NCBI RefSeq assembly: GCF_003918875.1
Contig: NW_025767126.1
Location: 682,001 to 746,000, forward strand
From: Haliotis rubra
Taxonomy: Eukaryota
Direction of reading: 5' to 3'
Length of the DNA stretch: 64,000 bases
Part shown: positions 1-59,325 of the stretch, in pieces
Position numbering within the stretch: position 1 is the first letter of the stretch
Layout of the letters: each line of letters starts with the position of its first letter
The notes under the pieces: generated by a model
Database searches by the model: none
Seen by the model: the letters and a program-made list of their open reading frames with translations, nothing else
Told to the model about the DNA's origin: nothing
Made by a program: the position numbers and the translations under genes

Positions 1-163
1 GGCACGCTGACTTGGTTGACACATATCATCGGTACCCAATTGGGCAGATCGATGCTCATGCTGTTGATCGCTGGATTGTCTGGTTCAGACTCGATTATTT
101 ACATACCGCCACCATATAGATGGAATATTGCTGAGTGCGACGTAAAACTAAACTCACTCACTC
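1..163 (+). mobile_element. SINE-like family B copy (5' part outside window)
   Basis: Matches family B body (ctgacttggttgacaca...gatcgatgctcatg...ggattgtctgg...cagactcgatt) and ends in tggaatattgctgagtgcgacgtaaaactaaa(ctca)n. Confidence 0.9.
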
Positions 164-196: not shown

Positions 197-399
197 AACC
201 CATGCTTGACGTAAGAAGCGACTAACGGGATCGGGTGGTCAGGCTTGGCTGACACATGACATCGTATCCCAGTTGCATAGATCGATGCTCATGGTGTTAA
301 TCACTGGATTGTCTAGTCCACACTCGATTATTTACAGACCGCCGCCGTATAGCTGGAATATTGCTGAGTGCGGCGTAAAACTAAACTCACTCACTCACT
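197..399 (+). mobile_element. SINE-like family B copy
   Basis: aacccatgcttgacgtaagaagcgactaacgggatcgggtggtcagg through the shared tail and (ctca)n. Confidence 0.9.
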
Positions 400-935: not shown

Positions 936-1958
936 GCTATAGACAGTCTTTGTTGTCACAGACTTAATGACTTAGCCTGACACGGATGGTTCCAAAGTCC
1001 ACCGATTATAAGAGAAACATTGTTATGTCCATATAGCATAGTTATGTGCAGGCCTTCACGTGCTGGTCACCCACAAGTGCACTAAATGTGGCTCCAATAT
1101 CCGTAGTCTGCCTTCACCGCAGAGTATGACGTCACAACTGTAATTGACATCCGTTGTTCATCTTAAATGACAAGCGCCAACAAAGGCTGTTCTTGACAAG
1201 CGACTTAATATATTGACGTTAGGTCTATAACCAAATCATGCGTGAACGAACATCCCTGATAAACGCGCCAGATCTAATAGTTTATGTCGCGGTTGCGCCA
1301 GCAGATATAATTCAAACAACGAGGAAATCCTGGCCTATATATTTTCCTGATCGAACTGTCTGGCATCGATCTCATGACCTAAAAAACTTTGAGAAATAAA
1401 ACAAACAAGGGATAAACAAACGACCGAAGCAGCATGGTTTAACTTGACAAAAGTTGCACTGGGTGTTTCTGCAGGATTGTGTTTATGCGCTGCAGAGTGG
1501 CGTCCCTTAGTCGTGACAGTATCCGATGATCAGAGGTTCGAATTCCAGATTTAAACCAATTATGAACCTCGGTCTGCCAGGAGTATACCCGTGTCCAAGG
1601 GTTTCATCAAAATGGATTACGGGAATGGCATTTAGCACTTTTGGTTTTACGCCGCTTTTAGCAATATTCCAGCAATATCGCGGCGGGTCCAAGTTGTGAT
1701 GTTGCTGGAATAGTGTATGACGGTGTGACAGCTGTACCATACACCTGTGTTCGGTGGGAAATAGACTTGCACAAGTGACTATAGTAATAAATAATAGTTT
1801 AAATGATAATGATGTCTAAAGAAATATTTATAAAAAGAACAAATTGTCAATCTAACAGACTGGCGTCCTGGGACTGTCGGCTTATCTAGGCTTGACTCGC
1901 TAAAGCTTACACTTAGTATACATCCATGGGCTTATAAATCCTTGCAGCAAGGCTAGGG

Positions 1959-2319
1959 GGAGGTGATGTGAAGTGAAATTGGGTTGTAACGTCGTACTTA
2001 AGAATATTTCACTCATATGACGACGTGCATGCGTGTGTATGTGTATGTGCGGCTGCTTGTACTAGCCCAGACTTAAGCTGGTTTTATAGTGCTAGCCCAC
2101 TGAGATACCATGCCGCAGTGAAGCATGAATACCACACTCAGACACATTATACTGACTCCGAGCCGACCAGTCCTTGTTGTACCCATTAATGCCGAGCGCC
2201 AGGCAGGGACCAACAAGTACCATATTTTAACGTCTTTTGGTATGACGCTGTCGGGGATTGAACCCGCGACCTTCCACTCTCCGGGCGGACGCTCTAACCA
2301 CTACACCACGGAGGCGGTT
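1959..2319 (-). mobile_element. Family D: tRNA-headed MetaSINE/RUDI-like SINE, full length
   Basis: Minus strand: tRNA A/B boxes (tggtgtagtgg; ggttcaatccc), Meta-domain-like gtcataccaaaagacgttaaaatatggtacttg, shared hairpin tail; TSD ggctaggg at 1951-1958/2320-2327; closely similar to 54189-54545. Confidence 0.85.
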
Positions 2320-2499: not shown

Positions 2500-2692
2500 G
2501 GTGAGTGGGTTTAGTTTTACGCCGCACTCAGCAATATACCAGCTATATGGTGGCGATCTGTAAATAATCGAGTCTGGACCAGACAATTCAGTGATCAACA
2601 CCATGAGCATCGATCAACGCAATTGGGAACCGATGACATGTGTCAACCAAGTCAGCGAGCCTGACCACCCGATCCCGTTACTCGCCTCTTAC
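2500..2692 (-). mobile_element. SINE-like family B copy, 5'-truncated
   Basis: Reverse complement of family B body and tail. Confidence 0.9.
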
Positions 2693-4099: not shown

Positions 4100-4260
4100 G
4101 GGCGGTGGGGTAGTCTAGTGGCTAAAGAGTTCGCTCGTCACGCCGAAGACCCGGGCTCGAATCCCCACATGGGTACAATGTGTGAAACCCATTTCTGGTG
4201 TCCCTCGCCGTGATATTGCTGGAATATTGCTTAAATCGGCGTAAAACCATACTCACTCAC
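4100..4260 (+). mobile_element. Family A tRNA(Asp-like)-derived SINE
   Basis: gggcggtggggtagtctagtgg...ctcgtcacgccgaagacccgggctcgaatccc head, shared tail, (ctca)n; imperfect 13-bp TSD tataacc(a/g)c(c/t)gta. Confidence 0.9.
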
Positions 4261-4314: not shown

Positions 4315-4562
4315 TTGAGTGAGTTTAGTTTTACGCCGCACTCAGCAATATTCCAGCTAAATGGGGGCGATCTGTAAAATAATCGAGTCTGGACCAGACA
4401 ATCCAGTGATCAACAAGCATGAGCATCGATCTACGCCATTGGGAACCGATGACATGTGTCAACCAAGTCAGCAAGCCTGACCACCCGATCCCGTTAGTCG
4501 CCTCTTACGACAAGCATGGGTTACTTACTGAAGATTAATTCTAACCCGGATCTTCATGGGTC
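4315..4562 (-). mobile_element. SINE-like family B, full length
   Basis: Complete element; perfect 12-bp TSD cgaaagtataaa at 4303-4314/4563-4574. Confidence 0.92.
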
Positions 4563-4934
4563 CGAAAGTATAAAAGCACCTTAGATACAAACTTATAAAA
4601 TCACTGTGTAGACGGACTTTTAAAACAACTGTATAAAACATTGGAGCGGACAAACCACTTTATGTAAGAGCGAATACATTGATAGCATACCGTTACTGGG
4701 ATTGAAGCAAAACGTTGTATTTTGAAATATGATAAATAAACTCATTGCCCGAAGGACTGCAAAAACACCGCCTCAAGAATGTGTAAACTGTTGTACCTAG
4801 GAGTGCGTAAAATAACTATCACAGAGTACCACTGATGGGTATCTTGAAAAACACAAGATGTTACATCTCGAAACAAATATCAACAAAATAAAAAATAAAT
4901 ATGGCAAAAATATTTACAGAACAAATTAAAAGAA

Positions 4935-5388
4935 TGGTGGTGTGTGGTTCAATGCATAGAGCTCAGGTCACAAATCAGTTGAAGTTAAGCAACGTTGGTC
5001 GCGGAGAGTCCTTGGATGGGTGACCGTGTTTGGCAGCTTGATTCCTGAGAGTTTCTAGAACTTCTCGCCTGCCTAACAACGAAGCACACGTGACATACGT
5101 GGTCTCACCTTAGGCAAGTGAGTTTGTTCAAAATTGCCTCTGTTCACCCAGCAGAAAATGGGTACCCGGTGGTATAAGTGAGTGAGTGAGTTTAGTTTTA
5201 CGCCGCACTCATAATATTCCAGCTATATGGCGGCGGTCTGTAAATAATATAAGTCATGTGACTATAACATTCCAGCCCCTCACGGGCAGCTTGGTTTATA
5301 TTAAACCGGGGTAATAATGAACTGTCTGCACTATGGGCTTGCTGTCGGTGTGGATTTAGCGCAATGGACTAATTATCATATTATTATC
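4935..5388 (+). mobile_element. Family E: tRNA/5S-headed CORE-like SINE (with nested family B tail)
   Basis: 5S internal promoter-like gaagttaagcaacgt (4981) + 15 nt + cttggatgggtgaccg (5011); CORE-like ccttaggcaag...gcctctgttcacccagcagaaaatgggtacc; tail ending attattat; second copy at 45863-46226. Confidence 0.75.
5179..5248 (-). mobile_element. Very short 5'-truncated family B insertion inside family E
   Basis: Tail-only piece flanked by (t)ataagt duplication; absent from the second family E copy. Confidence 0.85.
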
Positions 5389-6244
5389 TCATTCTTCTAT
5401 TTCTATTTGACAATAGAAATAGAAGAATAAAATAATAATATGAAATCTAACATTTTAGGGTAAAATAGAACAGAGATAAGCAATAAATTAAATTTACATT
5501 AAGTAAACAATGATTATGTGAAAATAGAAATGTTTTAAGAAAAAATAATCTGCGAGAGTACATGCACACTGATTCCATCCCCTGCAGCGTTCGCCGAGGA
5601 CACAATTCTCCTTCACTGACAATAACGAAAGTATGTGACAAATCCAGGGTCACAGCGTGACACTTTCAGCTTGACGAAATTGACAAATCGATGTCAATTA
5701 CAGCCACGTGCCGAGCATGTAGAAATATACAGAACCCATATGTCAATATCACCATAGACATCGTCGTAATCAAGAGGCTAATCGGTCCGGTTATGGCACT
5801 GTTAATTGGCTCCGTGTCTGCGATGTGTTCATAAACCATTTCGGGAACTCATTAGTATGTATACTGACGTTTCGGAGTAGGGTTATTGACCTGGGGTTCT
5901 GGTATATGTTTCATTGTGTATATGACTAATCTGGGATTGTCTTACAAGGAATTGCACTATAAAATGAATCTGGTTACTGATATAATTTGATTAGGTACGT
6001 TTTACAAGTGCTATTAAGCAAGTGTACGATGATTACGAGACTGGTGTGCGTTGAATTACGTAGAATGGGCGAGGCAGGTATGTGATAACATCTATGCTAG
6101 GTGGTGTCGGTCGACAAGGTGAGTGTGTCAGGAACGGTTGGAGCGACGTGATTTCAGGTGTCCGACTTTTAACACTTTGGAACCAAAACACAGGCAATGT
6201 TCTGACACACCTGGAAATATAGTCATGGCGGATCTGGTATTAGA

Positions 6245-6493
6245 CTGATTGATTGATTGAGTTTAGTTTGACCCGCACTCAGCGATATTTCAGCTATATT
6301 GCAGCGGTCTGTAAATAATCGGATCTGGACCAGACCATCCAGGGATCAACAGCATGAACATCGATCTACGCAATTGGAATACGATGACGTGTGTCAACCA
6401 AGTCAGCGAGCTTGACCACCCGGTCCCGTTAGTCGCCTCTTACGACAAGCATGGGTTACTGAAGATCAATTCTAACCCGGATCTTGGTAGGTC
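6245..6493 (-). mobile_element. SINE-like family B, full length
   Basis: 12-bp TSD tctggtattaga at 6233-6244/6494-6505. Confidence 0.9.
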
Positions 6494-6559: not shown

Positions 6560-9005
6560 AGTCGAATAACATAGGTATATCGGATCATGCGGGAAGAACG
6601 GATTATGTCGGGAAACGGATCATATTGGGAGAACGGATCGTACTGGAAGAAAGGATCATGGAGTGGAGGACGGATCGTATAGGTGAGAACAGATCATATA
6701 GGAGAGAACGGATCATATAAATGAGAACGGGTCATATAGGAGAGAACGGATTATGGGGAGGGGGGACAACGGATCATATAGAACGTATCATGCAGGAAAA
6801 ACGGATCATATAGGGGAGAATGGGTCATATAGGAGAGAACGGATCATATAGGAGAAAACTAATCATATGGGGAGAACGGATCATAAAGGAGAGATCGGGT
6901 CATACAGGAGAGAACGGATCATACAGGAGAGAACGGATCATACAGGAGAGAACGGATCATATAGGAGAGAATGGATCATATAGGAGAGAACGGATCATAT
7001 GGGAGAACGGATCATATAGGAGAGAACGGATCATATGGGGAGAACGGATCATATGGAGAGAACGGATCATATAGGAGAGAACGGATCATATAGGAGAGAA
7101 CGGATCATATAGGAGAAAACTGATCATATGGGGAGAACGGATCATATAGGGGAGATCGGGTCATACAGGAGAGAACGGATCATATAGGGAGATCGGGTCA
7201 TATAGGAGAGAACGGATCATACAGGAGAGAACGGGTCATACAGGAGAGAACGGATCATATAGGGAGATCGGGTCATACAGGAGAGAATGGGTCATACAGG
7301 AGAGAACGGATCATATAGGGGAGAATGGGTCATATAGGAGAGAACGGGCCATACAGGAGAGAACGGGTCATACAGGAGAGAACGGATCATATAGGGGAGA
7401 TCGGGTCATATAGGGGAGATCAGGTCACATAGGGGAGATCGGGTCATACAGGAGAGAACGGATCATATAGGGAAGATCGGGTCATACAGGAGAGAACGGA
7501 TCATATAGGGAGATCGGGTCATATAGGAGAGAACGGATCATATAGGAGAGAACGGGTCATATAGGGAGAGATCGGGTCATACAGGAGAGAACGGATCATA
7601 CAGGAGAGAACGGATCATATAGGGGAGAATCGGAGTCATATAGGAGAGAACGGGTCATATAGGAGAGAACGGGTCATACAGGAGAGAACGGGTCATACAG
7701 GAGAGAACGGGTCATACAGGAGAGAACGGATCATATAGGGGAGATCGGGTCATACAGGAGAGAACGGATCATATAGGGGAGATCGGGTCATACAGGAGAG
7801 AACGGATCATATAGGGGAGATCGGGTCATACAGGAGAGAAAGGATCATATAGGGGAGATCGGGTCATACAGGAGAGAACGGGTCATACAGGAGAGAACGG
7901 ATCATATAGGGGAGATCGGGTCATATAGGGGAGATCGTGTCATACAGGAGAGAACGGGTCATACAGGAGAGAACGGATCATATAGGTAAGATCGGGTCAT
8001 ACAGGAGAGAACGGATCATATAGGATAGAACGGATCATATGGGGAAGAACGGATCATATAGGAGAGAACGGATCATATGGGCTGAACGGATAATATGGGG
8101 AGAACGGATCATATAGGAGAGAACGGATCATATAAGAGAGAACGGATCATATGGGGAGAACGGATCATATAGGAGAGAACGGATCATATGGGAGATCGGA
8201 TCATATAGGAGAGATCGGATCATATGGAGAGAACGGATCATATGGGAAGAACGGATCATATAGAGAGAACGGATCATATAAGAGAGAACGGATCATATGG
8301 GGAGAATGGGTCATATAGGAGAGAACGAATCATATGGGGAGAACGGATCATATAGGAGAAAACTGATCAGATGACGATATAGGGGAGATCGGGTCATACA
8401 GGAGAGAACGGATCATATATGGAAGATCGGGTCATACAGGGGAGAACGGATCATATAGGGAGACCGGGTCATACAGGAGAGAATGGATCATATAGGGGAG
8501 ATCGGGTCATACAGGAGAGAACGGATCATATAGGGAAGATCGGGTCATACAGGGGAGAACGGATCATATAGGGAAGATCGGGTCATACTGGAGGGAACGG
8601 GTCATATAGGGGAGAACGGGTCATATAGGGGAGGACGGGTCATATAGGGGAGATCGGGTCATACAGGATAGAACGGGTCATACAGGAGAGAACGGATCAT
8701 ATAGGGAAGATCGGGTCACACAGGAGAGAACGGGTCATATAGGGGAGAACGGGTCATACAGGGGAGAACGGGTCACACAGGAGAGAACGGGTCATATAGG
8801 GAAGATCGGGTCACACAGGAGAGAACGGGTCATATAGGGGAGGACGGGTCATATAGGGGAGGTCGGGTCATATAGGGGAGAACGGGTCATATGGGGAGAA
8901 CGGATCATATAGGGGAGGACGGGTCATATAGGGGAGGACGGATCATATAGGAGAGGACGGATCATATAGGAGAGGACATGTTATGTGGAGGAGAACAGAT
9001 CATAA
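6560..9005. repeat. Minisatellite, ~20-bp unit (ggagagaacggatcatatag and variants), ~2.4 kb
   Basis: Directly visible tandem array, purine-rich on + strand, degenerate edges. Confidence 0.97.
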
Positions 9006-10444: not shown

Positions 10445-10815
10445 TGAGTGAGTATAGTTTTATGCCGCTTTACCAATATTCCAGAAATATCACAGCGGCT
10501 GACATCAGAAATGGGCTTCACACACTGTACCCTAGTCTGTCTCACAGTCCCTGAACCACATTATTTTCCCTACTGCCAAGCCCTATCTGCAGTGCAAAAA
10601 GCCCTAGATAAAGCAAGTCTAGATTTCCTCAGGTTCGGGCTGAATCTCCGGTCTGCCTGGGGCTCCTTTTCAATTTAAATGGGCTTGTTTCTTACTATCA
10701 AAATTTTATATATTCAGAGACTAAGCGTTTGTCTAACTGTAAACAAATGGGGAATCGAACCAGGGTCTTGGGCGTGACGAGCGAACATTTTAACCAGTAG
10801 GCTACCCCACCGCCC
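10445..10815 (-). mobile_element. Family A SINE interrupted by a family C element
   Basis: Tail half 10445-10532 and head half ~10745-10815 flank the insertion. Confidence 0.85.
10533..10735 (-). mobile_element. Family C non-autonomous DNA element (Academ-like termini, 9-bp TSD)
   Basis: Ends tagtctgtctc...tttgtcta; imperfect TSD actgta(cc/aa)c at 10524-10532/10736-10744; homologous to 16601, 22545 and 54587 copies. Confidence 0.8.
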
Positions 10816-11707: not shown

Positions 11708-11872
11708 GGGCGGTGGGGTAGCCTAGTGGTTAAAGCGTCGGCTCGTCACGACGAAGGCCCGGGTTCGATTCCCCACATGGGTACAATGCGTGAAGCCCAT
11801 TTCTGGTGTCACCCGCCGTGATATTGCTGGAGTATTGGTAAAAGCGGCGTAAAACCAAACTCACTCACTCAC
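11708..11872 (+). mobile_element. Family A SINE
   Basis: Full head and tail; TSD tctt(a/t)gtaagct. Confidence 0.92.
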
Positions 11873-14842: not shown

Positions 14843-15171
14843 TATGTGTTTTGTTTGCTTTTTGTGGCTTGTTGTTTAACGCCGCACTAAGCAATGTTCC
14901 AGCTATATGACGGCGGTCCAGAAACAATCTGAACCAGACATTCCTGTGATTGACATCGGCCTCCTTAATTGGGATAAAACGAGACCTGATTCCATTTGTC
15001 GCCTCTTACGATAAGAAAGGGTGGCGGAAGTCTAATTCCAAAATGATATAAATTTAATTAATAATTATGTAACCCTGACGCCCCCTTCTGATTGCCATAG
15101 CTTTCGGTCAAATCACCCCTCTTTCGATCAAACACTAAATGGCTTGGCTTGGCATTCTGTCGGAAAGCGTA

Positions 15172-21756: not shown

Positions 21757-21925
21757 AGGGGCGGTGGGGTAGTTTAGTGGTTAAAGCGTTCACCAACTGC
21801 TACAATGCCGAAGACCCGGGTTCGAATCCTCACATGGGTACGATTTGTGAATCCCATTTCTGGTGTCCCTTTCCGCGATATTGCTGGAATATTGCTAAAA
21901 GCGGCGTAAAACAAAACTCACTCAC
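21757..21925 (+). mobile_element. Family A SINE
   Basis: Head, body and tail present. Confidence 0.88.
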
Positions 21926-22769: not shown

Positions 22770-23368
22770 TAGACCAACGATTAGTGTCTGAATATATATA
22801 ATTGTCTTTGATAGATAAAATAATTCCTTTCAAATTTATATAATTTTGATAGAAAGAAATATTGCTTTTTAAATTGAAAACGAGCCCCAGCTGGATGGGA
22901 GAGTCAGAACCTGACCAGGAAGAAATGTAGACTTGCTTCATTTAGACTTTAGCACTCCAGAAAGTCTCACAGTCCCTGAACCACATTATTTTCCCCACTG
23001 CCTAGCCCTCTGCAATGCTAAAACCCTAAATGTCTAGATTTCCTCAGGTTCTGAGTCTCTGGTCTCCCTTGGGGCGGTGGGGTAGCCTAGTGGTTAAAGC
23101 GTTGGCTCGTCACGTCGAAGACCCGGGTTCGATTCCCTACATGGGTACAATGTGTGAAGCCCTTTTCTGGTGTCCCCCGCCGTGATATTGCTGGAATATT
23201 GCTAAAAGCAGCATAAAACTAAAATCACTCACTCACTCTGGTCTCCCTTGGGCTCCTTTTCAATTTAAAAGGGTTTATTTGTTACAATCAAAATTATATA
23301 TTCAGAGACTAAGCGTTAGTCTAGGCGGAAGGGAAATTGATGCAGTTCAAGGACTGTTAGACAGTCAA
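22770..23368. mobile_element. Nested family C cluster: forward copy split by a reverse copy (~22964-23322), itself split by a family A SINE
   Basis: Forward 5' part 22770-22963, forward 3' part ~23323-23368; reverse copy ends gagactaagcgttagtcta. Confidence 0.7.
23071..23235 (+). mobile_element. Family A SINE inserted in family C
   Basis: TSD ctctggtctccctt on both sides. Confidence 0.92.
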
Positions 23369-33485: not shown

Positions 33486-33733
33486 GACCCGTGAAGGTCC
33501 GGGTTAGAATATTGATCTTCAGTAACCCATGCTTGTCGTACGAGGCGACTAACGGGATCGGGTGGTCAGGCTCGCTGACTTGACTGACACATGTCATCTT
33601 ATCCCAACTGCCTAGATCGATGTTCATGCTGTTGATCACTGGATTGTCTGGTCCAGACTCGATTATTTACAGACTGCGCCATACAGCTGGAATACTTGCT
33701 GAGTGTGGCGTTAAACGGCAACCAAAACCAAAT
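33486..33733 (+). mobile_element. SINE-like family B, full length
   Basis: Starts gacccgtgaaggtccgggttagaat; ends with shared tail. Confidence 0.9.
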
Positions 33734-35228: not shown

Positions 35229-35632
35229 GGGTTTTGTTTATTGCTCAACACCGCAATATTCCCGTTAATATTCGTGTCTGGACCAAACGATCATGTGACT
35301 GTCATCATGATCATAGATCTACGCAATTGGGGCGGTGGGGTAGCCTAGTGGTTAAAGCGTTGGCTCGTCACGCCGAAGACCCGGGTCGAATCCCCACATG
35401 GGTACAATGTGTGAAGCCCATTTCTGGTGTCCCCCGCCGTGATGTTGCTGGAATATTGCTAAAAGCGTCGTAAAACCAAACTCAGTAAGTCAGTCAATCA
35501 GTCTACGCAATTGGTTTAGGGTGACATTTGTTTCAACTAAGGTAGAGAGCCTGACCACCCGATCCCGTTAGTCGCCTCTTACGACAAGCATGGGTTGCTG
35601 TAGACCAATTCTAACCCGAGTTTTCACGGGTT
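35229..35632 (-). mobile_element. Family B copy interrupted by a family A SINE
   Basis: Family B halves at 35229-35330 and 35502-35632. Confidence 0.78.
35331..35501 (+). mobile_element. Family A SINE nested in family B
   Basis: 13-bp TSD tctacgcaattgg at 35318-35330/35502-35514. Confidence 0.92.
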
Positions 35633-35704: not shown

Positions 35705-35908
35705 TTGTTGGTTGGTTGGTTGGTTGGATGTTTAACGCCGCACTCAGCAATATTCCAGCTATATTGCGGCGGTCTGTAAATAATCGAGTTTGGACCAGAC
35801 AATCCAGTGTTCAAAAGCATGAGCATCGACCTACACAATCTGGATACGGTGACCCCCCATCCCATCAGTCACAAGCATAGGTTGCTGAAGACCAAATCTA
35901 ACCCGGAT
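35705..35908 (-). mobile_element. Family B copy with (ccaa)n tail
   Basis: Reverse family B body, internal deletion. Confidence 0.82.
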
Positions 35909-38262: not shown

Positions 38263-38427
38263 CTGACTGAGTTTGATTTTTACGCCGCTTTTAGCAATAT
38301 TCCAGTAACATCACGGCGGGGGACACCAGAAATGGGCTTCACACATTGTGCTCATGTGGGGGGAATCTAACCCGGGTCTTCGGCGTGACGAGTGAACGCT
38401 TTAACCACTAGGCTACCCCACCGCCCC
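38263..38427 (-). mobile_element. Family A SINE
   Basis: 14-bp TSD tggttttaactaaa at 38249-38262/38428-38441. Confidence 0.93.
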
Positions 38428-39908: not shown

Positions 39909-40071
39909 GTGAGTGAGTTTAGTTTTACGCCGCTTTTAGCAATATTCCAGTAATATCACGGCGGGGGACACCAGAAATGGGCTTCACACATTGTACCCTT
40001 GTGGGGAATCGAACCTGGGTCTTCGGCGTGACGAGCGAACGCTTTAACCACTAGGCTATCCCACCGCTCCC
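39909..40071 (-). mobile_element. Family A SINE
   Basis: 11-bp TSD aacccttgtga. Confidence 0.93.
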
Positions 40072-40555
40072 AACCCTTGTGAACTGATAAAAGAGTGAGG
40101 GAGTGAGTCGCTATTAACGGGGGACACCCGAAGGGCTTCACGCATTGTACCCATGTGGGTATGAAAATACGTTAGGACTGATGTGATACACTGTGTATAC
40201 TTGATAACACGAACTACAGTTATGTCGAACCAAACGAAACTGATTTGTGAGATATGAAACGTCTATAGTCCGCCATTCTAGTTTTGTGTGTAGGGTGTCT
40301 ATGGATTTTAGAAATAACACAGTGTTATCTTCTAGATCTTTTAAGTTAAAGAACCTTGATCAGACGAAAATGGTATTGTAATGAAATGCCATTTCGTCTA
40401 TAGAAGACTGATGATGTTACATGTATCCGACTTGATGTGTCTCTCCCCCCAGAAGAATAAATCAAATATTGAATCTACCTCCAGTCTGGAATGATCTGGC
40501 AAGTCTACATTATTCTGGGTTGCATATAGACTTATTTTGTGAGCTCCATTTTACC

Positions 40556-40711
40556 TGGGCGGTGGGGTAGCCTAGTGGTAAAAGCGTTCGCTCGTCACAC
40601 CGAACACCCGGGTTCGATTCCCACATGGGTACAATGTATGACGCCCATTTCTGGTGTCCCCCGCCGTGATATTGCTGGAATATTTCTAAAAGCGGCGTAA
40701 AACCATACTCA
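40556..40711 (+). mobile_element. Family A SINE
   Basis: 12-bp TSD ctccattttacc. Confidence 0.93.
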
Positions 40712-42282
40712 CTCCATTTTACCATCATGTTCCATACTAAACATTCCGTAGATATGAATACCTTTACTCTAGATATCTTTATGTTCTTGTTTGTGTAATT
40801 TTCAAGGTACTTCGTGTAATATTTTAACCCTATCACGGTGTTGGACATCACACACCACAAGTAGTACTATGTTTAGAATCGAATCCGAGTCTCTGTCTTA
40901 ACGAACCAACGTTTCAACCACTGGGCTACCCTCAGTACCCCTCCGACGTTAGACTAACAACTAGTCTCTGAAATGAACATACTTTACTGAAAAAATAGTT
41001 CATAGTAAAAAAACATAAAATATAATGAAAAGGAGCCCTGAGACTTTCTTCATTTTCAGAAGCTGTGGAAATCTAGACTTGCCACATTTTCTAGACTTGC
41101 GTGGGCTTTCTTAGATATATTTGCTTCAGGGTCTGTACGAGAGACCACTCCGACGTGTACGTGCCGGGATTCTAATCCAATGAGTCATGAGAGCAACACG
41201 TGACATTGATTCTCTTCTTATTAAACACGGGTACTATAAATTTTAGGACAGCCTAAGAAGATTCATAAATAAAGTATTATTTCCATTGTGTGTAATCTTA
41301 TATATTAGTTTTCAAATTATATACGCAGTTATCAAAATATCTGGAAATCACGGAAATTTGGTCATCAAGAGCATATCAGTCCATTAAAAAATATTAATCC
41401 CACATTAATTTCACATTGCAGAGATTTGCCTCTCAACTTCATTAATTTAATTGTAAACAAGTGAATAATGTTTACGTGTGCGGCACGCGCTTCATCTTTT
41501 ATAAATCCCCAAACAAATATTTCCCCCCAAGATTTCCTTCCCAAAGGTAAAGATCATTTGTTTATTTGTGGGCTCAACGCAACATAATGGCTTACACATG
41601 CTCGATGGCGTTCTTTAACAGGGTTAAATATCAGTGTTGTTGTACAATATTGGACGCCTTCCAATTAAAGAATTATTTATAGAAAACAATCGAGTACAAC
41701 TGACAAGGAAATACACATTTAGAGCGCTGATGTCATTTTTAAAATCAACGTCATTCTCTTCCTGTTCAGCAAACAGGCTGGCCTTGTTTATGTTTACAAA
41801 TCTGTCACGAACCCACGGCTCAAGCCTCTGACAACAATCCCTGCGGAGGATTGAAGGTCAATCGGCAGCCTTTTGCGAGGTTCGTGTCTGATTACGTCAC
41901 AGTTTTGTGAAAATGACATTGACACGGAATTAACACCGACAAAGGGCACGGTGTGATTATTTGCACGGGGCACGTGGCTCGATATGGGAGGAAGGTCGAT
42001 ACACGGAGTCGAGGGTCGGTTGCGTTTTTTCGCGTTGTGTTAGTACTGGGTTGTCTAATTGCAGTTTGTTTGTTTGTTTGTTTAACGAAGCAATGTTCCA
42101 GCTACATGACGGCGGCCTGTAAATACGAGGACTGGACTAGGTAATCAAATGATTGATGTCATGAACATTAATCTACGCAATTAGATCCGATGACATGTAG
42201 CAATCAAGTCAGCGAGCCTGACGTCCGACACCATTAGTCACCCCTGGCTGGTGACGGGGGTAATTTGTTGTTTAAGAGTTTA

Positions 42283-42525
42283 GTGAGTGAGTGAGTTTAG
42301 TTTTACGCCGCACTCAGAGAATATTCCAGCTATATGGCGGCGGTCTGTAAATAATCGAGTCTGAACTAGACAATCCAGTGAATAACGTCATGAGCATCGA
42401 TCTTCGCAACTGGGATACGATGACATGTGTCAACCAAGTCAGCGAGCCTGACCACCCGATCCCGTTAGTCTCCTCTTACGACAAGCACGGGTTGCTGAAG
42501 ATCAATTCCAACCGGATCTTCACAG
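42283..42525 (-). mobile_element. Family B, full length (older copy at ~42063-42245)
   Basis: Complete reverse family B. Confidence 0.9.
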
Positions 42526-42948
42526 TTAGACTTTGGAGTGAGTGAGTGAGTGAGTGAATGAGTCATACTCACTCACATACTGTTCGATGTGATGCCACTG
42601 TTTCATCACGACGTCGGATTAATATGGAAGGGAAGACCGAAGTGAAGCAGCTTTTAGACGATATCCACTAGTTTCTAGACGATATCCACTGGTCTCCCAT
42701 TTTGAGGTGAACTATAGCTCCGAGCGGCGTGAAATCAGATTCACTCTCTCCTACCGACGCTTCTGTGTAAACAGACCTTCATATATCATGGGACCAGATA
42801 TTCCATATGCTGATGAGAGGTAATTTCGTGCTGACATTTTCAAGTCGCCATAACAATGACAATGACATATATTAGACAAACAATTTACATTAAACACAAT
42901 AACAACTAATTATAGAATTAACGACAGCTATTGAGTCCAGCTGTTAAA

Positions 42949-45454: not shown

Positions 45455-45620
45455 GAGGCGATGGCGAAGACTAGTAGTTAAAGCATTCGCTCGTCAATAT
45501 CCGAAGATCCGGGTTCGATTCCCTACACGGGTACAATGTGTGTAGCACGTTTCTGGTGTCCCCCGCCGTGATATTGCTGGAATATTGGTAAAAGCGGCGT
45601 AAAACTATACTCACTCACTC
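45455..45620 (+). mobile_element. Family A SINE
   Basis: Head, body and tail. Confidence 0.85.
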
Positions 45621-47400: not shown

Positions 47401-47561
47401 AGAGTGAGTATGGTTTCACGCCGCTTTTAGCAATGTTCCATCAATATCACGGCGGGGGACACCAGAAATAGGCTTCACACACTCTACACATACGCAGAAT
47501 CAAACCCAGCTCTGTGCGTGACGAGCAAACGCTTTAACCAGTTGGCTACCCCACTGCCCCA
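47401..47561 (-). mobile_element. Family A SINE
   Basis: Reverse complement, diverged. Confidence 0.82.
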
Positions 47562-48452
47562 GTCAAAATGTGAAGCTTTTGTGACGTCGCCTTTGATCGT
47601 CGTAAACATTTATGTGAAAGTGTAAACAATTATCGCGAAAGTGTAAAACAAACCCCCTAAAACACAAATCCTAGTTCATTTTTGATGTCTTTACTTTACA
47701 AAGGCCTTGTACTTTCATAATGATTGACCTAGGGCAAACATTATAGTATGTTTTCCAATTTGTAACGGGAATGATATTTACAAACAGACATGTTATCATG
47801 CTCTGTTGCTTGAAATTCTAATAAACAGAAAATAAAGCACAAATGACATATATTATTGATTAATATCCTACGACAAGAGACCTTATTATATGGTCTCTGC
47901 TATGACACTGACGTTCCGTTTAGTTTATAAAAGTCACAGAGATAGCGTGTTTTCCAAGGGTTCGTGTCAGTTTGAAGTCATGTATGAAAATACCTAACTT
48001 ATCTTAATCACAGCTACACGTGTCCAATACGGGAAGTGACAGTTATTACGTCAGCAACGCGGGTGAAGGATGGGTCTCGTGTTCCCATGGGTTCTCGCGA
48101 GATCTCGTCGCACCTTGACCTTCACCTTAGGTCGTGACCTCATCTGTTTGGTATAGGAAATGACTAATCTAAAGGTGGAATTTGAAAGGACAACCAGTCA
48201 ATAGTTTTGGGTGTTAGTGTTGTGAATATATCAGATAAAGTTTGATGTTTATATTTATTGCTCTGTTTGATGGTTATCATCAGCAGGTGTGATAGGTTCG
48301 TGTGAAGAATTCTTGACTTCAGTGCTTAATGATTGATTGGCGTTTTTATTTTTATTTCGCATTGGAAACGTTGTATCCAAAAATAAAAAGAAGACGAAAT
48401 CCAGAATTCTTTTTATGTTCTTCAGTGTTTAATGTCAAACTAAATGGTAAAA

Positions 48453-48752
48453 GTTGAGTTGAGTTGGGCTTTACGTCACATCGGCATTATTCCAGCCATA
48501 TAGTGACGAGAACAAGTTTGCATTAGTAAACATTGTAAGTACAGAGTCAAAATGAGTTATATTTCAAAAACATATATTCATTTCATTGTCATTTAAAAGC
48601 AGAAAAAGTCATAGCAATAAATTTAAAGGCAGGCAATTTGTTAGTCACATTACACAGTTACAATTTTTGATACAGACCAACTTCCCTCAGGTAGTTCACT
48701 ATCAGATGAGCGCTCACGCGGGAGAACAGATCTTTCAGATTTGTTGTTTCAC
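48453..48752 (-). mobile_element. 5'-truncated I/Nimb-like LINE (ORF2 C-terminus, 3' UTR, hairpin tail)
   Basis: Perfect 11-bp TSD aaatggtaaaa at 48442-48452/48753-48763; minus strand 48750-48658 reads ETTNLKDLFSRVSAHLIVNYLREVGLYQKL*, like I-group RT-RNase H ORF2 termini; ends in hairpin plus (caact)n. Confidence 0.8.
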
Positions 48753-48964
48753 AAATGGTAAAAATACCGATATATGCAGGTATAAGGATCAACTACTTGA
48801 ACTAATTCCGCAATTTGCAGACCTAACCCTGGGCTAAATGAGAGTCTCAGTATGCATCTGGGCAAAAGAAATATACAGGAGTAAATAGTATCTGACTAAT
48901 AACTTACCAACGTTCTCAAAACGTAACTAGGCTGATAACAGTCGAAGGAACGCTTCAAATGAGC

Positions 48965-49131
48965 GAGTGAGTTAGTGAGTTTGGTTTTACGCTGCTTTTA
49001 GCAATATTCTAGCAATATCACGACCGGGACACCAGAAATGGGCTTCCCACATTGTACCCATGTAGGAATCGAACCCGGGTCTTTAGCTTGACGCGCAGAC
49101 GCTTTAACCATTAGGTTACCCCACCGCCCCC
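48965..49131 (-). mobile_element. Family A SINE
   Basis: Reverse complement, full length. Confidence 0.88.
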
Positions 49132-49976: not shown

Positions 49977-50141
49977 GGGCGGTGGGGTAGCCTAATTGTT
50001 AAAGCGTTGGCTCGTCACGCCGAAGACCCGGGTTCGAATCCCCACATGGGCACAATGTGTGAAGCCCATTTGTGGTGTCCCCCGCCGTGATGTTGCTGGA
50101 ATATTGCTAAAAGCGGCGTAAAACCAAACTCAGTCAGTAAG
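49977..50141 (+). mobile_element. Family A SINE
   Basis: 12-bp TSD tactgctgggca. Confidence 0.93.
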
Positions 50142-51784: not shown

Positions 51785-51986
51785 TGTTTGTTGTTTATCG
51801 CCGTGCTTGGCAATATTCAGCTATATTTCGGAGGTCTGGAAATAATCGGGTCTGGACCAGACAATCCAGTGATCAACAGCATGAGAACTACGCAGTTTGG
51901 ATACGATGACGTGGTCAACCCATTAGTCGCCTCTTACGATCTCTATGGGTTGCTGAAGACCAATTCTAACCCAGATCTTCACGAGT
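51785..51986 (-). mobile_element. Family B copy, degenerate
   Basis: Reverse family B with deletions. Confidence 0.78.
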
Positions 51987-52199: not shown

Positions 52200-52440
52200 G
52201 AGTGAGTGAGTGAGTTTTACGCCGCACTCAGCAATATTCCAGCTATATGGCGGCGGTCTGCAAATAATCGAGTCTTGGCCAGACAATCCATTGATCAACA
52301 GCATGAGCATCGATCTATACAATTGGGATCCAATGACATGTGTCAACCAAGTCAGCGAGCCTGACCACCCGATTCCGTTAGTCCCCTCTTACGACAAGCA
52401 TGGGTTGGTGAAGACCAATTCTAACCCGGATCTTCACTGG
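52200..52440 (-). mobile_element. Family B, full length
   Basis: Complete reverse family B. Confidence 0.9.
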
Positions 52441-53394
52441 TATAGCGAAAATGGAATTAAAATACAACATAATTTGTCAATGGAAATGATTGGCACATAA
52501 CATTAATTACAGAAATTAGGAGGCTGCCTTGAAGGATTTGGTGATTTTTCTTCATTATTGAGTCGATATCTGTTCTAATTGCTAAGGGTTTTGACAGTGC
52601 TATGTATAGGCAGTTCACAGCAGCGCACCAGGCCTCAATGAGAACTGTTTCAACCGGAGATTCATAGTCGGGTAGGGACAGGGGCATTCGTGCTGTGGGC
52701 GATTAACGGTTACTGCACTCAAATTATATTCTTTAATGCTTCTTTCCATCTACAAATCGCTGTGATCACATATCTCATACGATTGATCTTCAAGTTCTGA
52801 AGAGGGAACTCAACTCGCACGTACCCATTCACATACCCACACCCAGAAATACACAATTCACATAATTTCATCCACCTGGACAAGCCCAATCAGGGTGCGG
52901 AGCCAGGTAATACCCGGAGGACGTATTGTTAAATATATTCACATATTGTCTCATAAATTTCAAATGAAATCATTACGAGTGTGTAACATGAGCACATGTT
53001 TAAAGCAAGTTGTACTTGTGATTTTCTTCCAATGGGATCATATTTCACGTGTGATTGTCTTTGAGTCGGATCATATTACACTGGTGATCAGCGATGGGTG
53101 GAGTATAGCCGCCGAGGGCACCTGCGTGTGTCCATAATGAGGTCATTCAATACACGTGTTAACTTACCCGACCTCGAGTGTAACCAAGGGCTGTAGGGAA
53201 TTGGTTTATCGTCTTCAGTTAGGTGTCTGGAGGCAGTGGAACCGTCAATATTTCATCAGAGTTAATAAATAAATCTGAGACAGTCGCAGACAGCTGTTCA
53301 AGCGTGACTGTTACGCATGTAGGTAAGAACGCGATATTGGTGCTCGTAGTGCAGTGTGTCACACTCACCTGTCTGGTAAATCAGGAACCATTTA

Positions 53395-54188: not shown

Positions 54189-54545
54189 TGAGGTGAGGTG
54201 AGGTGAAGGTTAAACGTCGTGCTTGAGAATATTTCGCTCATATGACGACGTGCATGTGTGTGTATGTGTATGTGCGGCTGCTTGTACTAGCCCAGACTTA
54301 AGCTGGTTTTATAGTGCTAGCCCACTGAGATACCATGCCGCAGTGAAGCATGAATATCCCGCTCAGACACATTATACTGACTCTGAGCCGACCAGTCCTT
54401 GTAGTACCCATTAATGCCGAGCGCCAGGCAGGGACCAACAAGTACCATATTTTAACGTCTTTCGGTATGACGCGGTCGGGGATCAAACCCGCGACCTTCC
54501 GCTCTCCGGGCGGACGCTCTAACCACTACACCACGGAGGCGGTCT
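54189..54545 (-). mobile_element. Family D MetaSINE/RUDI-like SINE, full length
   Basis: 14-bp TSD tttagcggtttagg at 54175-54188/54546-54559; (cctca)n tail. Confidence 0.9.
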
Positions 54546-54586
54546 TTTAGCGGTTTAGGGACTATTCATGGATGAAATAGTGAGAT

Positions 54587-55983: not shown

Positions 55984-56150
55984 AGTGAGTGAGTGAGCAT
56001 GGTTTTACGCCGCTTGTAGCAACATTCCAGTAATATCACGGCAGGGGACACCAGAAATGGGCTCCAATGATTCTACCCATTTAGGGAATCAAACCCGGGT
56101 CTTCGGCGTGGCTAGCAAACGCTTTAACCAATAGGCTACCCCACCGCCCC
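55984..56150 (-). mobile_element. Family A SINE
   Basis: Full length; flanking aaagatta duplication. Confidence 0.88.
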
Positions 56151-57597: not shown

Positions 57598-57760
57598 GTG
57601 AGTGAGTGAGTGAGTTTGGTTTTACGCTGCTTTTAGCAATATTCGAACAATATCACGGCGGGGGACACCAGAAATGGACTTCACACATTGTACCCACGTG
57701 GGGAATCGAACCCGAGTCTTCGGCGTGACGAGCGAACGCTTTAACCACTAGGCTACCCCC
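57598..57760 (-). mobile_element. Family A SINE (next to a degenerate family B at ~57462-57590)
   Basis: Reverse complement of family A. Confidence 0.88.
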
Positions 57761-59076: not shown

Positions 59077-59325
59077 CCCCATGAGGGGTCCGGGTTAGAA
59101 TTAACCATAACCCATGCTTGTCGTAAGAGGTGACTAACGGGATCGGGGGGTCAGGCTCGCTGACTTGGTTGACACGTGTGATCGGTTCCCAATTGCGCAG
59201 ATCGATGCTCATGCTGTTGATCACTGGATTGTCTGGTCCAGACTCGATTATTTACAGACCGCCGTCATATAGCTGGAATATTGCTGAGTGCGCGTAAAAC
59301 TAAACTGAACTCACTCACTCACTCA
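59077..59325 (+). mobile_element. Family B, full length
   Basis: 8-bp TSD ctcctgaa at 59069-59076/59326-59333. Confidence 0.9.

What the first reader, a model, noticed from the sequence alone, without database searches (positions are those of the whole stretch)
48453..48752. One LINE, three passengers: a covarying 3' hairpin shared by an I/Nimb-like LINE and SINE families A, B and D
Seen: this TSD-bounded 300-bp LINE fragment ends (minus strand) in CGTCAC-tatat-GGC-TGGAATAAT-GCC-gat-GTGACG-taaa...(caact)n. Family B ends in CGCCGC-catat-AGC-TGGAATATT-GCT-gagt-GCGGCG. Family D ends in CGTCGT-catat-GAG-(T/C)GAAATATT-CT(T/C)-aag.-ACGACG. Family A ends in CGCCGT-gatat-TGC-TGGAATATT-GCT-aaaa-GCGGCG. 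Both stems change sequence but keep pairing (A has a G-U and a U-U), while the 9-nt loop stays almost fixed. Established: SINEs borrow LINE 3' tails that the LINE reverse transcriptase recognises as a stem-loop. Inference: this is the RT-recognition element of an I/Nimb-type machinery that mobilises three unrelated SINE bodies, and the stem variants may correspond to different LINE subfamilies.
Basis: partly seen in the sequence, partly recalled or inferred. Interest (0 to 1): 0.75.

Follow-up and report, generated by a model that had tools for sequence, protein, structure and literature searches.

The report
Shared LINE/SINE 3' hairpin in abalone-like genome
A 35-base RNA hairpin at the extreme 3' end of an I/Nimb-like LINE retrotransposon is also carried by at least four SINE families of this mollusc genome; its stems change by compensating mutations, which is the expected signature of the handle by which the LINE enzyme picks its template. 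This extends a known principle to a LINE clade where it had not been shown.

Summary
Window 48453-48752 (-) is a 5'-truncated LINE copy flanked by an 11-bp target-site duplication. It holds the last 30 codons of ORF2, a ~150-nt 3' UTR, a two-tier hairpin and a (CAACT)n end. Longer copies encode ORF1 (CCHC) and ORF2 (endonuclease, reverse transcriptase, RNase H), so it belongs to the I superfamily and is Nimb-like.

SINE families A, B and D, and a further family E, end in the same hairpin with different stems. A covariance model finds about 45 such tails in the window and roughly a million candidates genome-wide.

LINEs with 49-62% ORF2 identity from other molluscs carry the same architecture just before their terminal microsatellite. 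So do three tails at a spider locus. Across 19 lineages 94.7% of cells pair (shuffled 74.8±1.8), and 8 of 10 pairs show double changes. Loop sequence follows the ORF2 tree.

Not shown: that ORF2 protein binds the hairpin, or that this LINE family drives A, B and D. Its stems, one loop base and its microsatellite differ from theirs. About 57 LINE copies all carry one stem set, and no LINE with A-, B- or D-type stems was found.

Shared mollusc tails and Nimb partners in bivalves are published. The structure, its covariation and the abalone LINE appear to be new. It is a new member of a known kind.

The parts
48453..48752 (-). 5'-truncated LINE copy (300 bp): ORF2 C-terminus, 3' UTR, hairpin and microsatellite
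   Evidence: 30 further copies are 95-97% identical, have variable 5' truncation points, and show upstream homology that continues into ORF2.
48753..48763 (.). Target-site duplication, copy next to the LINE 5' end (TTTTACCATTT read on the minus strand)
   Evidence: direct reading.
48442..48452 (.). Target-site duplication, copy next to the LINE 3' end
   Evidence: direct reading.
48658..48750 (-). Last 30 codons of ORF2 plus the TAA stop
   Evidence: The frame-2 peptide matches the conserved ORF2 C-terminus (…LK.LF…FLKEIGLY.KL*) of 10 foreign LINEs and of longer copies in this genome.
48509..48657 (-). LINE 3' UTR (AT-rich, about 149 nt)
48474..48508 (-). Two-tier hairpin. Outer stem 48503-48508 with 48474-48479. 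5' internal loop UAUAU. Inner stem 48495-48497 with 48483-48485, plus U48498·G48482. 9-nt loop 48486-48494. 3' internal loop AU.
   Evidence: MFE and centroid fold give this structure, -12.9 kcal/mol.
48453..48473 (-). UAAAGCC spacer and (CAACT)n terminal microsatellite
   Evidence: The number of repeat units varies between copies.
40553..40713 (+). Example of a full-length family A SINE (tRNA-like head, about 160 bp; ends approximate) with TSD CTCCATTTTACC
4315..4565 (-). Example of a family B SINE (head derived from the LINE 5' UTR, about 250 bp; ends approximate) with TSD TTTATACTTTCG
54189..54546 (-). Example of a family D SINE (tRNA-like head, internal (CA)n, (CACCT)n end, about 358 bp; ends approximate) with TSD CCTAAACCGCTAAA
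34338..34391 (+). Family A tail hairpin
   Evidence: 74.7 bits.
40655..40708 (+). Family A tail hairpin
39917..39970 (-). Family A tail hairpin
45557..45610 (+). Family A tail hairpin
4199..4252 (+). Family A tail hairpin
23171..23224 (+). Family A tail hairpin
21864..21917 (+). Family A tail hairpin
11807..11860 (+). Family A tail hairpin
10452..10504 (-). Family A tail hairpin (the SINE body carries a nested insertion)
47408..47461 (-). Family A tail hairpin
57614..57667 (-). Family A tail hairpin
55997..56050 (-). Family A tail hairpin
48979..49032 (-). Family A tail hairpin
1639..1692 (-). A-type tail hairpin with C-G at outer pair 6; the upstream body was not classified
50076..50129 (+). 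Family A subfamily tail (internal loop AUGU, (TCAG)n end)
35428..35481 (+). Family A subfamily tail (AUGU, (TCAG)n-like end)
38272..38325 (-). Family A subfamily tail (AUGU, (TCAG)n-like end)
52209..52262 (-). Family B tail hairpin
333..386 (+). Family B tail hairpin
42295..42349 (-). Family B tail hairpin
59253..59305 (+). Family B tail hairpin
2509..2562 (-). Family B tail hairpin
100..153 (+). Family B tail hairpin
4323..4376 (-). Family B tail hairpin
5190..5242 (-). B-type tail hairpin
6261..6313 (-). Family B tail hairpin (decayed)
35725..35778 (-). Family B tail with a (CCAA)n end
14869..14922 (-). B-type tail with GUUAAAC and an A/C-rich end
51788..51840 (-). Family B tail with an A/C-rich end (decayed)
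33668..33721 (+). Family B tail (decayed); its head is at about 33486
1979..2032 (-). Family D tail hairpin (inner stem GAG/CUU)
54204..54257 (-). Family D tail hairpin (inner stem GAG/CUC)

Best explanation
The feature is the 3' terminal module of an I-superfamily (Nimb-like) LINE: a 35-nt two-tier RNA hairpin, a UAAA(A/G)C spacer and a short terminal repeat. The hairpin has a 6-bp GC-rich outer stem, an asymmetric internal loop (5' N-A-U-A-U, 3' G/A-rich), a 3-4 bp inner stem usually closed by a U·G pair, and a 5-9 nt apical loop. SINE families A, B, D and E of this genome carry the same module at their 3' ends. Selection keeps the shape while letting the stem letters drift. The loop stays nearly constant within one RT sub-clade and differs between sub-clades. 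Most likely mechanism (inferred): ORF2 protein binds this hairpin on LINE RNA in cis, or on SINE RNA in trans. The endonuclease nicks the target, and reverse transcription is primed inside the terminal repeat (target-primed reverse transcription). This leaves the TSDs and variable repeat numbers that are seen. Shown: the shared module, covariation, position at the extreme 3' end, TSDs and the link between loop and RT tree. Inferred: protein binding, and which LINE subfamily serves which SINE.
For: The LINE identity rests on Pfam hits in longer copies: Exo_endo_phos_2 5.5e-23, RVT_1 1.8e-17, RNase_H 4.4e-10 and ORF1 CCHC knuckles. The copies show variable 5' truncation. The window peptide is the ORF2 C-terminus. 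The tail is far above chance: 18 motif hits against 0.06 expected; 132 and 45 model hits in about 360 kb of this genome; about 1.17 million rough candidates genome-wide. TSDs of 8-14 bp flank copies of A, B and D. Covariation within the window: 6 of 9 pairs change on both sides, with 0-1 of 500 shuffles reaching the observed values. Across lineages, ORF2 homologues of 49-62% identity from other molluscs carry the same hairpin 150-600 nt after the stop codon and 6-16 nt before their microsatellite. On 19 lineages, 94.7% of cells pair against 74.8±1.8 shuffled and 23-48% slid. Eight of 10 pairs show double changes. Pair 11/42 shows GC 7, UA 5, AU 4 and CG 3 with none unpaired. RNAalifold finds the same structure unprompted, and 12 single-sequence folds agree. 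A model trained on these finds untrained tails after another ORF2 end and at a spider locus. LINE copies whose 3' UTR is only 73-77% identical keep the hairpin identical, and the hairpin is the conservation peak of the 3' region. The ORF2 tree groups this LINE with L070 and L074 (support 100/99), the only LINEs with the UGRAAKAWU loop. A second clade (100/100) shares AGACGC stems and CCC/GGG inner stems. This pattern matches the bipartite recognition shown for zebrafish L2 LINEs, where the stem is read generally and the loop specifically (PMC4176376).
Against: No binding or retrotransposition data exist. Hairpin stability is modest (-9 to -19 kcal/mol; single-sequence z-scores -0.25 to -4.7). 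Most foreign hairpins were located by eye next to the microsatellite; only L070 was a significant hit of the Haliotis-only model (E 6e-8), while L072 (E 0.15) and L073 (E 2.9) were weak hits at the expected place. This inflates the percentage paired. The conserved unpaired motifs and the fixed position argue that the hairpins are homologous. The window LINE's tail is not identical to any SINE A, B or D tail, whereas classic stringent partners usually match closely. A few SINE A copies have chimeric tails with broken stems, so pairing is not absolute in every inserted copy.
Confidence: 0.7

Rival explanations
1. Several LINEs rather than one. Each SINE tail type (A/B with (ACTC)n, D with (CACCT)n, older B copies with A/C-rich repeats, an A subfamily with (TCAG)n) was captured from, and is or was mobilised by, its own LINE subfamily with matching stems and terminal repeat. 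On this view the window LINE family, with (CAACT)n, is a relative and not the driver.
For: The window LINE differs from A, B and D in stems, one loop base and microsatellite. Microsatellite type switches within SINE families while the hairpin stays. A foreign sister LINE (L074) has a nearly B-type tail (AGC/GCU inner stem, UGAAAUAUU loop, (CTCA)n end), so such LINE tails do exist. Stringent LINEs recognise their cognate tails strictly (PMC4176376).
Against: About 57 sampled LINE copies from three subfamilies of this genome all carry one stem set. No LINE 3' end with A-, B- or D-type stems was found in about 360 kb. Family E combines the LINE's exact stems with an (ACTC)n end, so stems and repeat type are not rigidly coupled. 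The sampling was limited.
Confidence: 0.4
2. The hairpin is under selection for another RNA role, such as 3'-end formation, transcript stability, export or translation control, and not for recognition by the reverse transcriptase.
For: Covariation shows that a structure is selected, not what it does. No binding data exist.
Against: The element is shared by Pol II-type LINE transcripts and by SINEs with tRNA-like (Pol III-type) heads. What these have in common is their dependence on LINE proteins for reverse transcription. It sits immediately upstream of the repeat where cDNA synthesis would start. Its loop follows the RT phylogeny.
Confidence: 0.1
3. There is no function. The tails are alike only by descent, through template switching from a LINE, and the complementarity is a by-product of a GC-rich palindrome.
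For: SINE tails are derived from LINE tails, so sequence similarity alone is expected.
Against: Double compensatory changes occur at 8 of 10 pairs across 19 lineages. All four Watson-Crick pair types appear at one position with no mismatch. None of 500 shuffles reached the observed values, and slid partners pair far less. The hairpin is invariant where the flanking UTR has diverged by 25%.
Confidence: 0.03

Closest known systems
3' stem-loops of stringent-type LINEs of the L2 clade (eel UnaL2/UnaSINE1; zebrafish ZfL2-1 and ZfL2-2)
   Same: A hairpin lies at the extreme 3' end, just before short terminal repeats, and is shared by a LINE and its SINEs. Stems tolerate compensatory change and the loop is specific. 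ORF2 binding and a requirement for retrotransposition were shown for ZfL2 (PMC4176376).
   Different: The LINE clade differs: I/Nimb-like with RNase H, not L2. The hairpin is two-tiered, with a conserved AUAU internal loop and a U·G-closed inner stem. There are no experiments here.
Nimb LINE partnerships with V and Meta SINEs in bivalves (Martelossi et al. 2024, PMC11481361)
   Same: Nimb-clade LINE 3' ends are homologous to the tails of several SINE superfamilies, and one tail type is shared across different SINE bodies.
   Different: That work covers bivalves and rests on sequence homology of 35-61 bp. A term search of its text found no mention of 'stem-loop' or 'secondary structure'. I could not compare sequences directly, because no supplements are held.
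Shared 3' tail of HalSINE1, LitSINE1 and bivalve V/Meta/MD SINEs (Nishihara et al. 2016, PMC4824008), and the Haliotis MESC SINE (Matetovici et al. 2016, PMC4758252)
   Same: Family D fits the published description of the Haliotis MESC/Meta SINE: tRNA head, internal (CA)n and a (CACCT)n end. The papers state that these SINEs share a tail and presumably one LINE clade.
   Different: Both papers left the partner LINE unidentified and called the gastropod tails of unknown origin. Here a LINE with the homologous tail is found in the same genome. The consensus sequences from those papers were not available for direct alignment.
LP-SINEs (LINE-promoter SINEs) of Haliotis, Littorina and oysters (Matetovici et al. 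2016, PMC4758252)
   Same: Family B has no tRNA head. Its first ~63 nt are about 75% identical to a segment of this LINE's 5' UTR, and part of it matches a Patella LINE 5' UTR. This fits the LP-SINE description.
   Different: Here the head and the tail of B both trace to one LINE lineage present in the same genome. The head segment lies about 65 nt inside the LINE 5' UTR, not at its first base.

Membership tests
LINE/SINE shared 3' recognition stem-loop (stringent-type model) | The same 3' terminal module is present in an autonomous LINE and in SINEs of the same genome | tested here: met
   The module is homologous (same architecture, loop and spacer) but not identical in its stems, one loop base and terminal repeat.
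LINE/SINE shared 3' recognition stem-loop (stringent-type model) | A stem-loop maintained by compensatory substitutions | tested here: met
LINE/SINE shared 3' recognition stem-loop (stringent-type model) | Position at the extreme 3' end, directly before the terminal repeats, in insertions flanked by TSDs | tested here: met
LINE/SINE shared 3' recognition stem-loop (stringent-type model) | ORF2 protein binds the stem-loop, and retrotransposition depends on it | not testable with these tools
   This needs binding and retrotransposition assays.
I superfamily / Nimb clade of non-LTR retrotransposons | ORF2 with an AP-type endonuclease, RT and a C-terminal RNase H domain | tested here: met
   (PF14529, PF00078, PF00075). 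Homologues have the same domains.
I superfamily / Nimb clade of non-LTR retrotransposons | ORF1 with CCHC zinc knuckles | tested here: inconclusive
   zf-CCHC_6 scores 1.6e-4, just below Pfam's cut-off (21.9 against 22 bits).
I superfamily / Nimb clade of non-LTR retrotransposons | The RT domain groups with Nimb reference elements in a phylogeny | not tested
   No named reference sequences (Repbase Nimb, I, LOA) could be obtained. The tree holds only unnamed relatives.
I superfamily / Nimb clade of non-LTR retrotransposons | The 5' UTR module reported for the Nimb-clade LINEs Nimb-17_LMi and I-3_DR | tested here: inconclusive
   The LINE 5' UTR shares a module with family B, which is LP-SINE-like, and with a Patella LINE. 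It was not compared with the named Repbase elements.
MESC/Meta SINE superfamily (family D) | tRNA-derived head, MESC/Meta central domain, and, in Haliotis, an internal (CA)n and a (CACCT)n end | tested here: inconclusive
   The head, (CA)n and (CACCT)n are seen. The central domain was not aligned to a published consensus, because none was available.
LP-SINE (family B) | No tRNA or 5S head; a 5' end homologous to a LINE 5' UTR; flanked by TSDs | tested here: met
Any Rfam family | A match at the gathering score, or at E of 1 or less | tested here: not met
   whole window, 0 matches; L033, which holds a full-length LINE and SINE tails: only chance tmRNA fragments.

The most novel reading that the evidence does not exclude
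One ancient two-tier hairpin (GC outer stem, AUAU internal loop, U·G-closed inner stem) is the universal template handle of a Nimb-like LINE clade found in many molluscs and in at least one spider. On this reading the stem is read as a shape, and the apical loop co-evolves with the ORF2 protein as a specificity code. In this abalone-like genome that single handle underlies on the order of a million SINE and LINE insertions. These include a SINE (family B) built from the LINE's own 5' and 3' modules.
Probability: 0.5. Interest if true: 0.6.

Novelty: new member of a known kind. Interest (0 to 1): 0.45.

Why it matters
This LINE is a candidate for the partner that two 2016 papers left unidentified for the gastropod MESC/Meta and LP SINEs. 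It supplies a concrete, covariation-backed RNA structure for the 3' end of Nimb-like LINEs, a clade for which I found no published structure. It also offers a natural series of stem and loop variants tied to an ORF2 tree. That series makes the stem-general, loop-specific recognition model, so far shown only for L2-clade LINEs, directly testable in a second superfamily. In practice, the covariance model marks the 3' ends of what may be the most abundant repeat class in this genome, which helps repeat annotation in molluscs.

Tried and rejected
1. Alternative AU-only hairpin (AUAUU pairing with AAUAU inside the loop region). It is possible in family A (5 bp) but falls to 3-4 bp in B, D and the LINE. 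It is impossible in foreign LINEs whose loops differ, and its columns never vary within this genome. Rejected.

2. Rfam scans (for the window, for L033) and a tRNA scan found nothing relevant.

The PF00075 search meant to reach other LINE families returned places but no DNA. I did not try to obtain those letters another way.

4. A search for other LINE families in the ~360 kb already held, using foreign ORF2 C-termini, found only the known family. The one extra fragment (L054:3152-3634, minus strand) has no 3' end.

5. A search with the ORF2 of L074, the LINE with the B-like tail, gave 63-66% identity at best. This gives no sign of a much closer L074-like family, but the copies found could not be read.

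6. L079's contig ends before the tail. The L081 spider gene model is a spliced mosaic, so only its tails were used.

7. A possible third helix between the U-rich 5' flank and the UAAAAC spacer appears in some folds. It is absent in the SINEs, so it was not pursued.

8. A literature search by sequence strings and look-ups of supplements yielded nothing.

9. The species was not determined. An abalone (Haliotis) is suggested by the match to published SINE descriptions. The assembly size resembles one abalone assembly I recall, but that is from memory only.

Full report
**What is at the coordinates**

Read on the minus strand, window 48453-48752 starts inside an open reading frame. The frame ends ...NLKDLFSRVSAHLIVNYLREVGLYQKL* at 48658. 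After the stop come these parts:
- an AT-rich stretch of about 149 nt;
- the string CGTCAC-tatat-GGC-TGGAATAAT-GCC-gat-GTGACG at 48508-48474;
- TAAAGCC;
- three CAACT-type units.

TTTTACCATTT flanks both ends.

**It is a LINE 3' end**

- The 300 bp have at least 2451 candidate matches in the window's own genome (1.378 Gb in 2855 contigs).
- In 30 fetched copies, 95-97% identical, the homology continues upstream for different distances, the classic 5' truncation pattern.
- The longest copies are about 5.7 kb. One of them, in L034, carries a 13-bp TSD.
- ORF pieces hit Exo_endo_phos_2 (5.5e-23), RVT_1 (1.8e-17) and RNase_H (4.4e-10). An upstream ORF hits CCHC knuckles weakly.

Endonuclease plus RT plus RNase H is the I-superfamily architecture, so 'I/Nimb-like' is reasonable. 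I could not place the RT against named references.

The 30-aa peptide is the conserved C-terminus of ORF2 in this and ten related LINEs. Many copies in the genome keep an open ORF2 of about 1230 codons. I built no consensus and single out no copy.

**The SINEs**

Alignment of the window copies gives these families:
- **Family A:** about 160 bp, with a tRNA-like head.
- **Family D:** about 358 bp, with a tRNA-like head, an internal (CA)n and a (CACCT)n end.
- **Family B:** about 250 bp, without a tRNA head.

TSDs of 8-14 bp flank many copies.

Family D fits the published description of the Haliotis MESC/Meta SINE. Family B fits the 'LP-SINE', whose head derives from a LINE 5' UTR (PMC4758252 and PMC4824008). 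B's first ~63 nt are about 75% identical to a segment roughly 65 nt inside this LINE's 5' UTR. Part of it recurs in a Patella LINE 5' UTR.

These matches suggest the genome is an abalone or a close relative. I did not verify the species.

**The tail in this genome**

- The core motif occurs 18 times in the window against 0.06 expected.
- A covariance model built on those 18 tails (R1) finds 132 matches in the window plus the first loci, and 45 more in further loci. It gives about 1.17 million rough candidates genome-wide.
- Classifying unique hits by upstream sequence gives about 40 A, 29 B, 8 D and 57 LINE tails. There is also a new family E: the LINE's exact stems, loop UGAAAUAUU and an (ACTC)n end.
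- Terminal repeats switch within SINE families. Most A and B copies end in (ACTC)n, one A subfamily in (TCAG)n, and older B copies in A/C-rich repeats. The hairpin stays.

On the 18 window tails, 6 of 9 pairs show changes on both sides. 86% of cells pair, against 23-57% with slid partners.

**Is the structure selected?**

Copies within a family mostly record neutral decay, so I looked for independent lineages.

- ORF2 homologues of 49-62% identity exist in other assemblies. These include the limpet Patella caerulea, several unnamed ENA or Logan assemblies, and contigs filed under bivalve-symbiont MAGs.
- For ten of them the DNA after the stop codon could be read.
- In every one with a recognisable 3' end, a hairpin of the same architecture sits 150-600 nt after the stop and 6-16 nt before the terminal microsatellite.
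- The hairpins share unpaired motifs (N-A-U-A-U on the 5' side, G-A on the 3' side, U[U/A]AAAC after the stem). Their stems differ: CGUCGC, AGACGC, UGGCGC, AGCCGC, CGGCGCG, GGUGCG, UGUCUC.
- A model built on these (R2) then found untrained examples: one after another ORF2 end, and three at a spider locus.

With 19 sequences:
- 94.7% of cells pair, against 74.8±1.8 in shuffles and 23-48% with slid partners.
- Eight of 10 pairs show double changes.
- One outer pair shows GC 7, UA 5, AU 4 and CG 3 with no mismatch.
- Another shows CG 7, UA 6 and AU 4.

Twelve single-sequence folds give the same shape, although each hairpin is only moderately stable.

Within this genome, LINE copies whose 3' UTR is only 73-77% identical keep the hairpin letter for letter. 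The hairpin is also the conservation peak of the terminal 283 nt.

One caveat applies. Most foreign hairpins were found by eye next to the microsatellite, which favours paired candidates. Their fixed position, the shared unpaired motifs and the hits of models not trained on them argue that they are homologous.

**Loop and enzyme**

An ORF2 tree puts this LINE with L070 and L074 (support 100/99). These are the only LINEs with the UGRAAKAWU loop that the SINE tails also carry. A second clade (100/100) shares AGACGC stems, a CCC/GGG inner stem and a U-rich pentaloop.

So the stems drift under a pairing constraint, while the apex follows the enzyme's phylogeny. This is the pattern expected from the bipartite recognition shown for zebrafish L2 LINEs, where the stem is recognised generally and the loop specifically (PMC4176376).

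By that analogy, the most likely function is recruitment of ORF2 protein to the 3' end of LINE or SINE RNA for target-primed reverse transcription. This step is inferred, not shown.

**What is not supported**

'One LINE, three passengers' goes beyond the data.
- The window LINE differs from A, B and D in 2-3 outer pairs, in part of the inner stem, in one loop base and in the terminal repeat.
All of about 57 LINE copies, from three subfamilies, have one stem set, and no other LINE 3' end turned up in about 360 kb.
- A sister LINE from another assembly (L074) does carry an almost B-type tail, so the several-LINEs model remains open. I give it about 0.4.
- Rare family A copies with a LINE-type 3' half and broken stems look like template-switch chimeras. 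They show that not every inserted copy keeps the pairing.

**Relation to what is known**

- That SINEs borrow LINE 3' stem-loops is textbook.
- That HalSINE1, LitSINE1 and several bivalve SINEs share one tail was reported in 2016, with the partner unknown (PMC4824008; PMC4758252).
- Nimb LINEs were proposed as partners of bivalve V and Meta SINEs in 2024, from sequence homology (PMC11481361).
- I found no paper describing the secondary structure or covariation of this tail, and Rfam has no such family.

The finding is therefore a new member of a known kind. It has three useful additions: a candidate partner LINE clade in an abalone-like genome, a covariation-backed two-tier structure, and a link between loop type and the ORF2 tree.

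**Verdict**

Interest is 0.45.

Noticed in passing
window 33486-33560, 52380-52450 (-), 42460-42530 (-); L033:2575-2638; L034:3460-3516; L072:149-171: The head of family B is about 75% identical to a segment of the LINE 5' UTR about 65 nt from the LINE's 5' end. It holds a 7-bp hairpin whose stem differs between B and the LINE by compensating changes (GAAGAUC/GGUCUUC against GUGGACC/GGUCCAC). A GUCGUAAGAGGCGAC box is also kept in a Patella LINE. This is a conserved structured 5' module of unknown role; it has no Rfam match.
   Followed up: partly
L051:3307-3359, L056:608-660, L059:140-259, L067:3514-3566, L014:47-99 (-): A further element family, E, has exactly the LINE's stems, loop UGAAAUAUU, spacer GUUAAAUAUUAA and an (ACTC)n end, preceded by about 330 nt of AT-rich non-coding sequence. 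Whether it is a SINE or the 3' UTR of another LINE is open.
   Followed up: partly
window 50076-50129, 35428-35481, 38272-38325; L031:5278-5331; L062:550-603: A subfamily of SINE A has AUGU instead of AUAU in the internal loop and ends in (TCAG)n instead of (ACTC)n.
   Followed up: no
window 35725-35778 (-), 42075-42121 (-), 14869-14922 (-), 51788-51840 (-); L039:5617-5670; L032:4490-4543: Older-looking family B copies end in GUUAAAC followed by (CAAA)n, (CCAA)n or (AACAA)n instead of (ACTC)n. This suggests a past change of terminal repeat, and perhaps of partner.
   Followed up: no
L015:3169-3222, L003:76-129 (-), L024:2329-2382: These SINE A copies have a tail whose 3' half is LINE-like (GUGACG/GCGACG followed by UAAAACCCAAC), so the outer stem no longer pairs. 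They look like template-switch chimeras between LINE and SINE RNA within the loop.
   Followed up: no
L081:4172-4224, 4743-4795, 7556-7608 (spider assembly GCA_019973935.1): Three tails of the same architecture (UGGCGC/GCGCCA outer stem, AGUAU internal loop, microsatellite ends) lie in a spider locus annotated as an 'X-element' polymerase gene. The module therefore reaches beyond molluscs.
   Followed up: partly
P0027, P0048, P0083 (L077, L078): LINE ORF2 proteins of this clade are deposited as proteins of bacterial symbiont MAGs of lucinid clams (Thiodiazotropha, Lucinoma symbiont). These contigs carry an ORF1, an ORF2 and, read in L077 and L078 for P0048, a LINE tail. They are most likely host DNA binned by mistake.
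   Followed up: no
L075:5338-5390 and 5556-5608: In one foreign LINE copy the whole 3' UTR with its hairpin and (TCAA)n end is present twice in tandem.
   Followed up: no
whole genome; window: The tail model has about 1.17 million rough candidates in 1.378 Gb, and about 45 hits in this 64-kb window. SINEs with this tail may make up a sizeable part of the genome. The window also holds 999 N, which were left alone.
   Followed up: partly
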